Below are positions 51,669-55,711 of a stretch of 64,000 bases of DNA, piece after piece. Within the stretch, counting starts at the first letter, position 1. Each line of letters starts with the position of its first letter. The position numbers were made by a program, and so were the translations under genes. The notes under the pieces were generated by a model. That model was not told where the DNA came from. It made no database searches and was given only the letters and a program-made list of their open reading frames with translations. Origin of the DNA: Obrimoposthia wandeli (Eukaryota); the NCBI GenBank assembly GCA_977020255.1, contig CDROCS010000506.1, positions 1,798,001 to 1,862,000 on the forward strand, in the 5' to 3' direction.

Positions 51669-52793
<1,125 letters not shown>

Positions 52794-52810: not shown

Positions 52811-52870
52811 TTAATTTAACCGTCTTCGGTAAATAACTCGGTCATTACCGCGGAAAAAGCCGAATATCAT
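52811..52870 (-). pseudogene. mshQ: mshQ deletion remnant (19-aa mini-ORF)
   Basis: ATG overlaps the mshP stop (ATGA) and reads MIFGFFRGNDRVIYRRRLN*. This matches the MshQ/DUF6701 C-terminal motif FGxxRGNDRIIY (recalled) at the usual mshQ position. Confidence 0.8.
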
Positions 52871-53295
52871 AACTTAACTTCTGCTTCCACTTTATGCTGC
52901 GCGACAATTTTCCCACCATCGCAGGTACCAGTTGATCTTAGATAATATTGCTTACTAGTATCAGGTAATGCAATAATTTGACATTCTATATCTACCCTAC
53001 AATTTTCCCAACCGACACCACTGCTTATAACAGAAAGGGTTTTAAAGGGTTTATCTGGAAACAAATTACACGTCAAAGTGCTATTTAACGCATTATAAAT
53101 GCCATACTCCATACCGCTATCGGCCGCATAATAAGCTTTCGCGCTATACACTTCATTCGCAACACTGTCTGCGGTTGAACTTAAGATTCGACTCAACGAC
53201 GCCGCTAATAACGAAATAACCACAATAATAAAAATAGCGATCACCAGCATGCTGCCTTGCTGCTGATAAGGACTCGAATGACGATTACGGCACAT
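52867..53295 (-). CDS. mshP: MSHA minor pilin MshP (PilX-like)
   Basis: QQGSMLVIAIFIIVV and AYYAADSGME; follows mshO. Confidence 0.88.
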   Translation of the reverse strand: MCRNRHSSPYQQQGSMLVIAIFIIVVISLLAASLSRILSSTADSVANEVYSAKAYYAADSGMEYGIYNALNSTLTCNLFPDKPFKTLSVISSGVGWENCRVDIECQIIALPDTSKQYYLRSTGTCDGGKIVAQHKVEAEVKL

Positions 53296-54076
53296 TAGAC
53301 ATTACCACCTGATGTTCAAATTTAATTTCACCGTTATCACGTAATAAGAAGTTAAAATTCAACTCCAAAATAGCATTACTAAACTGAGTCGCGCTGGTTA
53401 ACGACATGTTACTGCCAGCAGCGAGGTTATCAGCCATTAATACTCCAGAAGTCGAAACAGGTAATGGAAATGATTTAGTTAACAACACTTGGCTACGACG
53501 TAGCTGTCCAGCCGATATACAGTAGCGCACTTTATTCTCTGCAATAAAATAGCGTGAGGCAGCAGAGTCGAGTACTAATGGAACATCGAGTGTTAACGTG
53601 GCAACTGCACCAGAGCTTGATGCACTCATAATGGTTGCGACTGTATCTGTCGTACTCGAATCTATGCTATAAAAATCATTTTCCTGAGTTGTTAATACGC
53701 TAATACGCTGACCTATAAACGTTGTTACCGCTCGACTTCCAGAACGAGTGATTGGATCCATTATAAGCTCGATTGTACCTTGCCCTGCAACATTAGCAAT
53801 ATATTGGCCAGCAGCCGTAAAAGGTACAAACTGCATACATGTCCCGGAGTCCTGCACACTAAACGCAATAGCAGAATCCAATTCTTTACTCATGCGGTTT
53901 ATCACAAATCGCGCATCATTAAGGCGTTCATTTTGATTAACCGATGATTGATACAGCACCACGTTATCAGCAATAAAGCGACTGCTGAAAGTACCAACAA
54001 CCCCCAGCAATATAATCACAGTAACCAATTCAACAAGGGTGAATCCAGCCTGCGTATATTTAATCATTTTAGGCAT
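53285..54076 (-). CDS. mshO: MSHA minor pilin MshO
   Basis: AG|FTLVE prepilin cleavage motif; 263 aa; position. Confidence 0.88.
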   Translation of the reverse strand: MPKMIKYTQAGFTLVELVTVIILLGVVGTFSSRFIADNVVLYQSSVNQNERLNDARFVINRMSKELDSAIAFSVQDSGTCMQFVPFTAAGQYIANVAGQGTIELIMDPITRSGSRAVTTFIGQRISVLTTQENDFYSIDSSTTDTVATIMSASSSGAVATLTLDVPLVLDSAASRYFIAENKVRYCISAGQLRRSQVLLTKSFPLPVSTSGVLMADNLAAGSNMSLTSATQFSNAILELNFNFLLRDNGEIKFEHQVVMSNVP

Positions 54077-54619
54077 TAATAATTCCCCTTAAATGACGTC
54101 AGCGTAATACTTTCATTGTTGGGCATCAATATAGTAACCCGGATCCGTTTAGCAACATGATCAAGCGTGCTGGTTTCACCGAATTGCGCTGCCGCATTAG
54201 CAACGCATATATTCAATCCATAACCGGGGTATTCATTAGTAAATTCTTCCAAGGTATCTACAGGGTCCGCATTACAATACACATGGTAATCATCAACGTC
54301 ATTGAAGCCATCTGGATTATCGCTCTTTTCACCTGCATCTAAGCCTAATTTGCTACACGAAATAGTCACACCGCCAATATTCTTGCCACAACGAATAGCG
54401 CCATTAGTTCTGGCGTTCACATCATCATAATAACGAATTAGCACCTGGTTCATAATGCTCTTGCCTAATGCTGTCGCTTTTATCTGATACATAGGCGTAG
54501 TCATTTTATTCGCTTGTGGTAAGAACACACCAGTTACAATAGTCAACGCTACCGCTAATACCACGATACCGACAACAATCTCAATTAAGGTAAAACCGCG
54601 TTGTTTATATCTTCTTCAT
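54076..54619 (-). pseudogene. mshD: MSHA minor pilin MshD, probable 5' frameshift
   Basis: The frame carrying KQRG|FTLIE has TGA at 54618-54616 upstream. The only nearby ATG (54619) is 1 nt out of frame and reads MKKI*. The body (FNDVDDY, KRIRVTI) is intact. Confidence 0.7.
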
Positions 54620-55124
54620 GGATATAGCCTTGAGATTCGATGCGAATTGATAATGTTTGCTCGCCGAAAATACTGATATCACAGCCAGCGCAGCTACTTG
54701 CCACACCACGAGAGTTAAATTCAATCGTATGCGGGCTAAATTTAATAGCACTACTATCAGCCTCCGCTTTACTCATACCTAATTGAGGTGGATTAAATAT
54801 AACGGGTAGCTCAAGCACAGTCGAATTATCATCATCACAGTTTGTAGGAATACCAAATCGACTTGGTTCAGTGCTACTTTCTGCAACAATCAGCACTTTG
54901 TTACAAGCATAAGGATTAGTCGTGCGAGTACTACGACACGCCTTATCACAACTCATTGCTTGTTGCTGTACGGTTTTTAATAATTGTAGTAATTGGTCAC
55001 GATAAGCTTGAACTTCAAAGCCATCATTACCAATTAATTTGGGGATCGCAGTTGCGGCGAGAATACCAGTCAGGATAATTACGATAACTAGTTCAATGAG
55101 GGTGAAGCCGGAGTTTTTGTGCAT
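54585..55124 (-). CDS. mshC: MSHA minor pilin MshC
   Basis: SG|FTLIE motif, RDQLLQLLKTVQQQAM and C-terminal IESQGYIH. Confidence 0.88.
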   Translation of the reverse strand: MHKNSGFTLIELVIVIILTGILAATAIPKLIGNDGFEVQAYRDQLLQLLKTVQQQAMSCDKACRSTRTTNPYACNKVLIVAESSTEPSRFGIPTNCDDDNSTVLELPVIFNPPQLGMSKAEADSSAIKFSPHTIEFNSRGVASSCAGCDISIFGEQTLSIRIESQGYIHEEDINNAVLP

Positions 55125-55189
55125 ATGCTATCGAACCTGATGGCTTAAGAGTTGTGGGTGCTAAGTATTAGCGTTTTCCCATACTGATT

Positions 55190-55247
55190 ATTGATAATAT
55201 TATCAATTTAAGGTAGTTGCATTAATAATGAATTATTAATGCAACTA
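55190..55247. repeat. Two adjacent palindromes upstream of mshC
   Basis: ATTGATAATATTATCAAT, perfect 18 bp (55190-55207); TAGTTGCATTAATAAT-GA-ATTATTAATGCAACTA, 16-bp arms (55214-55247). Confidence 0.85.
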
Positions 55248-55259
55248 ATTCGTAAAAAT

Positions 55260-55290
55260 AAAAAAGGCTTACCGAAGTAAGCCTTTTTTA
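55260..55290 (-). terminator. Terminator after mshA
   Basis: AAAAAGGCTTAC-CGAA-GTAAGCCTTTTT. Confidence 0.88.
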
Positions 55291-55311
55291 TAATAGCGAT
55301 TAATTTATTAT

Positions 55312-55711
55312 TTACTGGACAAGTCACGTTTTAATAGTTTTTATCACCTGTTGGCTTGTTATAAGTCACACAAAAGTATCTTTAGCATCAGCGATGAAGA
55401 AGATACGAAGGATGTGTAAGCCAAAACCACTTAATTCAACAGCCTTTAATACCACTACATGTTGCAGGATAACCAAACCAGTATAACAACACCACCAGCA
55501 CTGCAGTAGTTCTCTACGTCATGACAATAGCCGCTTTAGAATAAACAATATTTGCAGCACTATGAACTGCAGCTTCAACGCCTTTCATTGCAGATTCTTT
55601 AGCATCATCTTGAAGGTTAATAAATTTCGGCACAGCAGTGGCAGCTAAGATACCTAGTACAATAATTACGATCACTAATTCGATTAGTGTAAAACCTGAA
55701 TTTCTTTTCAT
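55312..55711 (-). pseudogene. mshA: MSHA major pilin MshA, disrupted
   Basis: SG|FTLIE pilin N-helix intact to about codon 63, TAG at codon 66. Remnants FGYPA (55463-55477), CVTY (55361-55372) and VTCP (55316-55327) are separated by further stops and frameshifts. GGAG SD and terminator are retained. Confidence 0.85.

What the first reader, a model, noticed from the sequence alone, without database searches (positions are those of the whole stretch)
52811..52870. mshQ collapsed to a 19-codon in-frame scar: start codon fused to the C-terminal motif
Seen: an ATG overlapping the mshP stop (TTATGA) opens MIFGFFRGNDRVIYRRRLN-TAA, ending about 100 bp before mreB. It is too short for the ORF track. 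Known: mshQ, a very large putative tip adhesin (DUF6701), lies between mshP and mreB in Vibrio and Shewanella and, as I recall, ends in FGxxRGNDRIIYxRE. Inference: a multi-kb deletion removed nearly all of mshQ but left frame, coupling and the mreB upstream region intact. The kept peptide resembles the C-terminal strand of PilY1-like adhesins that is thought to engage the minor-pilin tip complex, so it might still be translated and interact.
Basis: partly seen in the sequence, partly recalled or inferred. Interest (0 to 1): 0.75.

Follow-up and report, generated by a model that had tools for sequence, protein, structure and literature searches.

The report
Deletion scar of pilus adhesin mshQ
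In this Moritella chromosome the roughly 3-kb gene for the MSHA pilus tip protein MshQ has been deleted down to its start codon plus its last 18 codons; this is almost certainly a dead remnant, and a second, longer MshQ-like gene survives 113 kb away.

Summary
On the minus strand, 52870-52811 reads ATG + 18 codons + TAA (MIFGFFRGNDRVIYRRRLN*). The ATG overlaps the mshP stop (ATGA), and 101 nt follow before mreB.

The window is a Moritella chromosome. Ten of 13 Moritella species carry a 930-1118 aa MshQ (DUF6701) at this spot, ending ...FGFF[Y/S/R]GNDRVIYRRRLN*. Similarity to those genes resumes exactly at 52864, so about 2.8-3.3 kb was lost.

It is not an assembly artefact. Contigs from three sequencing runs, two of them from other studies, carry the junction. 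Two other species (G004, G005) have their own mshQ scars with different breakpoints and no start codon.

A working peptide is unlikely:
- It has no signal peptide, while its presumed partner, the MshP globular domain, is periplasmic.
- mshA and mshD in this locus are also broken.

New here:
- Every genome that lost this mshQ keeps an intact, lectin-domain DUF6701 paralog at a distant conserved site (here 1467 aa, ending FGLFRGNDRVIYRRVIN*).
- The nearest relative shows the reciprocal loss.
- The retained block is the most conserved part of MshQ and lies 29 nt upstream of a genus-conserved mreB promoter.

Verdict: a real, ordinary gene-loss scar in an informative evolutionary setting.

The parts
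52811..52870 (-). 19-codon ORF plus stop: the remnant of syntenic (type A) mshQ
   Evidence: It matches the C-terminus of M. dasanensis and JT01 MshQ at 17 of 18 residues.
52863..52870 (-). Junction zone of the deletion. ATGAT comes from the 5' end and TTCGGC... from the 3' end. The exact breakpoint cannot be placed within about 6-8 nt.
   Evidence: In some searches the alignments of the two sides overlap here. In one search, contigs from strains with intact mshQ diverge at 52864.
52811..52864 (-). Retained 3' block of mshQ: the last 17 codons plus the stop
   Evidence: it aligns with 13 Moritella species, and the variation among intact genes falls almost entirely on third codon positions; this is the most conserved 18-aa window of type-A MshQ.
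52867..53295 (-). mshP (PilK/PilX-type minor pilin), intact
   Evidence: PilX_N; 75% aa identity to M. dasanensis MshP over its full length.
52753..52781 (-). sigma-70-like mreB promoter (TTGCCA, 17-nt spacer, TAAAGT with an extended -10 TG), 29 nt downstream of the scar's stop
   Evidence: consensus scan; both hexamers and the whole spacer are nearly invariant in 13 species.
51669..52709 (-). mreB, intact
   Evidence: MreB_Mbl, E = 7.5e-147.
53285..54076 (-). mshO, intact
54076..54620 (-). mshD. The ATG is out of frame with the prepilin motif: four extra nt compared with M. dasanensis. The first in-frame start lies inside the hydrophobic helix.
55350..55711 (-). mshA (major pilin) pseudogene. 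Codons 1-62 are intact (94% identity). The rest is scattered over three frames with stops.

Best explanation
The 19-codon ORF is a non-functional remnant of the ancestral mshQ that sat next to mreB. I call this gene 'type A': a DUF6701 protein of about 940-1100 aa with a chitin-binding-like insert. MshQ is the MSHA pilus counterpart of the PilC/PilY1 tip proteins. One deletion of about 2.8-3.3 kb, or nested deletions, joined the first one or two codons to the last 18 codons. That the frame is kept is most simply luck, with a prior of one in three. The loss was tolerated for two reasons. First, the genome carries an intact second MshQ ('type B': 1467 aa, signal peptide, two LamG/pentraxin-like lectin domains, a full DUF6701 domain and the same C-terminal signature) 113 kb away. 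Second, in this lineage the MSHA filament genes are decaying anyway: mshA and mshD are broken. Why the last 54 nt survive is inferred, not shown. They lie immediately upstream of the strongly conserved promoter region of the essential gene mreB, so deletions reaching further would be removed by selection. They are also the only conserved sequence at the right edge of a hypervariable, recombining pilin island, so recombination joints tend to fall there. Shown here: the homology, the direction of the event (a deletion), its recurrence, the paralog, and the broken neighbouring genes. Inferred: that the paralog substitutes for type A, and the reason the 3' block was kept.
For: Synteny and homology: MshQ lies between mshP and mreB in 10 of 13 Moritella species. 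Several other bacteria in the same assembly also have a DUF6701 gene beside mreB. This sets the direction of the event as a deletion.

Not an artefact: the junction is present in Logan contigs of X1, X2 and X3, while other contigs in X3 and X11 diverge at 52864 into intact mshQ sequence. No other gene in the 1.35-Gb assembly ends in the type-A RRRLN signature.

Recurrence: G004 and G005 have different scars, although their mshA, C, D, O and P genes are intact.

Paralog: L011 3643-8046 encodes 1467 aa with DUF6701 at 317 bits plus Laminin_G_3 and Pentaxin matches. It sits at the same site in G004, G005, G007 and G001, and is cleanly absent from the nearest relative G002, which keeps type A.

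C-termini: type B ends RRLN or RRVIN, the same length as type A, in the three genomes that have only type B. It is one residue longer in the three genomes that also carry type A.

Locus decay.

Peptide: it has no signal peptide (read from the sequence). A synonymous GAG to GAA change weakens the Shine-Dalgarno sequence seen in relatives.

mreB promoter footprint.
Against: In intact genes the third codon positions of the 54-nt block vary freely, so a strict DNA-level constraint on that block is not shown. The predicted promoter lies wholly downstream of the stop. All three scars beside mreB still encode an undamaged peptide, which could mean either selection or simply recent origin. The intact type B gene sits oddly with a dead mshA in this genome; type B may serve something other than MSHA. 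The tree rests on a single 4.6-kb flanking region.
Confidence: 0.8

Rival explanations
1. The peptide is a working micro-protein. It keeps the beta-strand 'licensing' signal of MshQ and still primes assembly of the MshD-O-P tip complex, giving MSHA pili without an adhesin. This would be a natural counterpart of the engineered pilK-Cbeta fusion.
For: The retained residues are the most conserved block of MshQ. PMC13533445 shows that the last 12 aa of PilC/PilY1 are necessary and partly sufficient when fused to PilK, and predicts the same role for MshQ with MshP. The ORF keeps the native ATGA-coupled start. Three scars all keep the block undamaged. In G005 the block is in frame with mshP, behind a single TAA.
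Against: There is no signal peptide and the peptide is not fused to MshP. It lies in a different frame from mshP, and I saw no slippery sequence at the overlap on inspecting the sequence. A cytoplasmic 19-mer cannot reach the periplasmic MshP domain. mshA and mshD are broken in this genome. The scars in G004 and G005 have no in-frame ATG, GTG or TTG. The Shine-Dalgarno sequence is weakened.
Confidence: 0.05
2. The scar is an assembly or consensus artefact: the region collapsed or is a chimera in a mixed-strain sample, and mshQ is really present.
For: The assembly is a 1.35-Gb mixture. Several Moritella strains are visible in the runs: in X1, 24 laid contigs match at 99% or more, 35 at 95-99% and 30 at 90-95%. 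Strains with intact mshQ co-occur in X3 and X11.
Against: The junction is found in contigs from three runs, two of them from other studies (X2 food metagenome, X3 organism B). Genome assemblies of two other species show the same kind of loss. No orphan type-A mshQ exists anywhere in the assembly. A unique 3-kb gene has no repeat that could cause a collapse.
Confidence: 0.02
3. The block is kept purely as DNA. It would be part of the mreB control region (an UP element, an activator site or a second promoter), and its coding potential is irrelevant.
For: The block lies at roughly -65 to -125 relative to the start site predicted from the conserved promoter. The spacer is nearly invariant across the genus. 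All three independent deletions stop short of it. The only scar-like sequence that is not next to mreB, in the PE36 spacer, is degraded.
Against: Third codon positions vary among intact genes, so most of its bases are not constrained as DNA. No promoter-like site falls inside it. The PE36 case is statistically weak.
Confidence: 0.3

Closest known systems
MshQ (DUF6701, PF20419), the last gene of the MSHA type IV pilus locus in Vibrio, Shewanella and Moritella
   Same: Same position between mshP and mreB. Same ATGA-coupled start. The C-terminal 18 residues match at 17 of 18.
   Different: About 920-1070 codons are missing, including the signal peptide and nearly all of the DUF6701 domain. It is a pseudogene remnant, not a member of the protein family.
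The C-terminal beta-strand-addition signal of PilC/PilY1 (PNAS 2026, doi 10.1073/pnas.2602298123, PMC13533445)
   Same: The retained residues correspond to the extreme C-terminus that this paper predicts docks on the PilK homolog MshP.
   Different: In the paper the strand works on an exported protein or when fused to PilK. Here it is a free peptide with no leader. No docking was tested here.
Reciprocal loss of redundant paralogs, such as the two interchangeable pilC genes of Neisseria described in the same paper
   Same: There are two MshQ-type genes with the same C-terminal signature, and every genome keeps at least one.
   Different: The two types differ in their adhesive modules: type A has a chitin-binding-like insert and type B has LamG/pentraxin lectin domains. 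Loss is by deletion, not by phase variation.

Membership tests
MshQ / DUF6701 (PF20419) | DUF6701 domain (577 profile positions) | tested here: not met
   Only the last ~18 residues remain. tblastn finds MshQ residues 924-940 only. Intact relatives score 229-317 bits.
MshQ / DUF6701 (PF20419) | C-terminal motif FG..RGNDR[IV]IY | tested here: met
MshQ / DUF6701 (PF20419) | Gene lies after mshP and before mreB, with its start coupled to the mshP stop | tested here: met
MshQ / DUF6701 (PF20419) | N-terminal Sec signal peptide, giving an exported protein | tested here: not met
   The 19-mer starts MIFGFFRGND and has no hydrophobic leader. The intact type A and type B proteins have one.
PilC/PilY1-type beta-strand licensing signal | The strand is delivered to the periplasm on an exported protein or fused to the PilK homolog | tested here: not met
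   It is a separate ORF in another frame than mshP and has no leader.
PilC/PilY1-type beta-strand licensing signal | The strand completes the beta-sheet of the PilK homolog (MshP) | not testable with these tools
   Only single-chain prediction is available here. The paper's model is for V. cholerae.
Functional MSHA pilus locus | Intact major pilin mshA and minor pilins mshC, D, O and P | tested here: not met
   mshA is broken after codon 62 and the mshD start is out of frame. mshC, O and P and mshE, G, L, M and N are intact.

The most novel reading that the evidence does not exclude
The retained C-terminal block is kept because it still works. At low level it would reach MshP, for example through rare frameshifting or readthrough that appends it to MshP; in G005 the block is in frame behind a single TAA. 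It would then license tip-complex assembly without any adhesin, a natural version of the engineered pilK-Cbeta rescue. A milder form of this reading: the block serves as a landing pad that lets mshQ cassettes be swapped in and out by recombination.
Probability: 0.05. Interest if true: 0.8.

Novelty: new member of a known kind. Interest (0 to 1): 0.4.

Why it matters
By itself this is an ordinary gene-loss scar. Its value is comparative. Moritella offers natural genotypes with type A only, type B only, both, or scar-only. [quoted passage not shown] Three separate deletions removed everything except the part of MshQ that includes that signal. In the genomes that have only type B, its C-terminus has the type-A length and ending. 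That gives a directly testable prediction: a distant, unlinked adhesin gene can plug into the MSHA tip complex, exchanging a chitin-binding tip for a lectin-type tip.

Tried and rejected
1. Relocation of mshQ. The distal 1467-aa gene is not the moved copy. Its 3' end is only about 79% identical to the scar over about 54 nt, with no flanking similarity. It also sits at a site shared by five Moritella genomes.

2. A degraded scar-like sequence in the PE36 spacer between mshP and mshQ. This suggested a history of 'scar plus re-acquired mshQ', and collapse by recombination between two 3' blocks. The alignment score beats 998 of 1000 shuffles of that spacer. However, similar scores occur elsewhere in the 15-kb locus, so I keep it only as a lead.

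3. An 11-nt match in the G007 spacer (ATGATATTTGG) is within chance.

4. An exact search for the 21-nt junction in JGI metagenome contigs found nothing. That search needs an exact match, so this says little.

5. A paper search for 'MshQ' alone returned only clinical questionnaire papers. Adding 'MSHA' and 'pilus' found the relevant work.

6. Not run: the large protein searches, structure prediction and fold search. The family scans and genome comparisons left nothing open that these could settle, and the tools offer no complex (multi-chain) prediction.

7. The exact breakpoint and any microhomology could not be fixed. No genome holds the direct intact ancestor of this allele, and the two sides overlap over 52863-52870.

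Full report
**1. What is there**

On the minus strand, 52870-52811 reads ATG ATA TTC GGC ... AAT TAA, which translates to MIFGFFRGNDRVIYRRRLN*.
- The ATG overlaps the TGA of the preceding 142-aa ORF as ATGA.
- That ORF is a PilX_N-type minor pilin, mshP.
- Upstream on the same strand lie mshO, D, C and A, then G, E, N, M, L, K and J.
- Downstream, after 101 nt, comes mreB (ATG at 52709; MreB_Mbl E = 7.5e-147).

**2. Where it comes from**

The window is part of a 3.78-Mb contig (G000:C506) inside a 1.35-Gb mixed assembly. A search with MshO identified the organism as Moritella.

Across mreBCD-maf-rng the nearest species representative is G002, M. dasanensis ArB 0140, at 94.6% identity. A tree of that single 4.6-kb region gives ((G007,G004),(G005,(window,G002))).

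**3. It is the remnant of mshQ**

- In M. dasanensis, JT01 and PE36, an ORF of 940-1088 aa lies between mshP and mreB.
- In the first two species its ATG overlaps the mshP stop in the same ATGA arrangement.
- In those two species the protein ends ...FGFF[Y/S]GNDRVIYRRRLN*, which is 17 of 18 identical to the scar.
- A genus scan finds this 'type A' DUF6701 gene at the site next to mreB in 10 of 13 species.
- DNA similarity to all of them resumes at 52864/52865 and continues into mreB at 90-96%.
- On the other side, similarity to mshP runs through ATGAT. The junction therefore lies within 52863-52870 and cannot be placed more finely, because no genome holds the intact ancestor of this allele.
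- The deletion is about 2.8-3.3 kb.

Other bacteria in the same assembly also have DUF6701 genes beside mreB. The ancestral state is therefore a full gene, and the event is a deletion, not an insertion elsewhere.

**4. Not an artefact**

- Logan contigs of three runs cover the junction: the probable source sample X1, a food metagenome X2, and organism B run X3 from another study.
- X3 record 29 spans 52832-53026.
- Other contigs in X3 and in the RNA run X11 follow mreB up to 52864 and then continue into intact mshQ-like sequence, so strains with and without the gene co-occur.
- Only contigs were available, not raw long reads.
- No other gene in the whole assembly ends with the Moritella type-A RRRLN signature.

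**5. The loss is recurrent**

G004 and G005 also lack mshQ at this site. Their scars differ from this one.
- G004 keeps nine 5' codons followed by a stop, then about 80 nt, then about 30 codons of the 3' end.
- G005 has a TAA stop for mshP and no ATG. It keeps about 45 codons of the 3' end, including a PKWL motif also seen in M. dasanensis. These happen to be in frame with mshP.
- Neither remnant has an in-frame ATG, GTG or TTG.

The sequences upstream of the FGFF block do not align between G004 and G005. At least two events, and probably three, are therefore independent. In both species mshA, C, D, O and P are intact.

**6. A second MshQ**

On the same contig, 113 kb away (L011 3643-8046, minus strand), lies an intact 1467-aa gene. 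It has:
- a signal peptide;
- a DUF7305-like stretch that falls just below the Pfam cut-off (26 against 27 bits);
- two LamG/pentraxin-like lectin domains;
- a full DUF6701 domain (317 bits).

It ends FGLFRGNDRVIYRRVIN*. It is not the relocated copy: its 3' end is about 79% identical to the scar over about 54 nt, the differences are mostly synonymous, and there is no flanking similarity.

This 'type B' gene occupies the same site, beside a tRNA cluster and a cytochrome c gene, in G004, G005, G007 and G001. It is cleanly absent from G002. The distribution is:

| Genomes | Type A (beside mreB) | Type B (distant site) |
|---|---|---|
| window, G004, G005 | lost | intact |
| G002 | intact | lost |
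| G001, G007 | intact | intact |
| G006 | intact | broken |
| G003, G008, G009, G010, G012, G013 | intact | none |

G011 is an incomplete 2.7-Mb genome. It has a DUF6701 gene beside mreB (563-aa ORF), whose type I did not assign.

No genome lacks both. All three losses of type A fall in genomes that carry type B. Ignoring phylogeny, that is 10/364, about 0.03.

The C-termini follow the same split. Where type B is alone it ends ...RRLN or ...RRVIN, 18 residues from the FG, the same as type A. Where it coexists with type A it is one residue longer (RRKVVD, RRRVNN, RRRVYN). I read this as functional redundancy, with type B able to take the type-A docking role. This is an inference.

Type A also carries a GbpA-like chitin-binding segment inside DUF6701, so the two types probably bind different surfaces.

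**7. This locus is decaying further**

- Compared with M. dasanensis, mshA is intact for 62 codons (94% identity). After that it is scattered over three frames with stops. The conserved AVELSGFG piece and the terminator hairpin are still recognisable.
- The mshD ATG is out of frame with its prepilin motif. There are four extra nt, and mshC is extended as a result.
- mshE, G, L, M, N, C, O and P are full length.

Two earlier first-reader notes on this window say the same. I checked the mshA claim myself. These breaks were not checked against reads.

**8. Could the peptide work?**

PMC13533445 (PNAS 2026) shows the following:
- They are necessary for piliation.
- They are partly sufficient when fused to PilK.
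- From modelling, the MshQ C-terminus does the same with MshP.

The retained 18 residues are the most conserved 18-aa window of Moritella type A: 16 of 18 columns are invariant against 25% overall, while the proteins are 43-70% identical in pairs.

The arguments against a working peptide are stronger:
- It has no leader and would stay in the cytoplasm, whereas the MshP globular domain is periplasmic.
- It is in a different frame from mshP, and I saw no slippery site on inspecting the sequence.
- The Shine-Dalgarno sequence seen in relatives is weakened by a synonymous change in mshP.
- The major pilin is broken.
- The scars in G004 and G005 cannot be translated.

I put a working peptide at about 5%.

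**9. Why the last 54 nt survive (inferred)**

- The spacer between mshQ and mreB is almost invariant in 13 species. It contains TTGCCA, a 17-nt spacer, and TAAAGT with an extended -10 TG. Both hexamers are conserved even in the most distant genome. The scar's stop is 29 nt upstream of the -35 hexamer, so deletions running further would hit the control region of an essential gene.
- The stretch from mshA codon ~62 to mshP is far more diverged from the nearest relative than either flank: 62-75% aa identity against 94-97%. The conserved 3' block of mshQ is the right-hand edge of this variable island. Informative sites suggest a mosaic joint within the spacer.
- Against a strict DNA-level constraint: third codon positions in the block vary freely among intact genes.

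**10. Verdict**

The speculation about function is improbable. This is an ordinary pseudogene remnant, but it sits in an informative natural series: recurrent scars, reciprocal loss of two adhesin paralogs, and matching C-terminal signatures. That series bears on the new beta-strand licensing model for type IV pili.

Noticed in passing
window 55350-55711 (minus strand): The major pilin gene mshA is a pseudogene. Codons 1-62 are intact. The rest is spread over three reading frames with stops. The downstream terminator hairpin is conserved.
   Followed up: partly
window 54565-54620 (minus strand): The mshD start codon is out of frame with the KQRGFTLIE prepilin motif: four extra nt relative to M. 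dasanensis. As a result mshC gains a 12-residue tail.
   Followed up: partly
L011 3643-8046 (G000:C506:1963643-1968046, minus strand): An intact orphan 1467-aa DUF6701 protein with two LamG/pentraxin-like domains. It lies next to a tRNA cluster, at a site shared with four other Moritella genomes, and is cleanly absent from the nearest relative G002.
   Followed up: partly
L016 (G005:C34:308300-310300), between mshP and mreB: The ~45-codon mshQ remnant of G005 is in the same frame as mshP, separated by a single TAA. This resembles the engineered pilK-Cbeta fusion apart from the stop. The prior for being in frame is one in three, and G004 is also in frame but behind five stops.
   Followed up: no
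L012 11222-11400 (PE36, spacer between mshP and mshQ): A degraded sequence resembling the scar's 3' part follows the mshP stop, ahead of a full mshQ that has its own ~170-nt leader. Statistical support is weak.
   Followed up: yes
L043-L047 and L011 (type B C-termini): Type B ends with the type-A length and an RRLN or RRVIN tail in the three genomes that lack type A. It is one residue longer in the three genomes that also carry type A.
   Followed up: partly
L013 11192-14011, residues 597-661: Moritella type-A MshQ has a GbpA-like (chitin-binding module) segment inserted in the middle of DUF6701. The match is well below the model's cut-off: E = 2e-10, 39.8 bits.
   Followed up: no
window 53300-55525 compared with the flanks: The stretch from the mshA 3' half to mshP is a hypervariable island: 62-75% aa identity to the nearest relative, against 94-97% for mshG, the mshA N-terminus and mreB. 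This suggests exchange of pilin cassettes by recombination.
   Followed up: partly
X2 joint 52840 to 53095: One food-metagenome contig joins the scar region to mid-mshP, skipping 254 nt. It may be a strain with a divergent or further deleted mshP 3' half.
   Followed up: no
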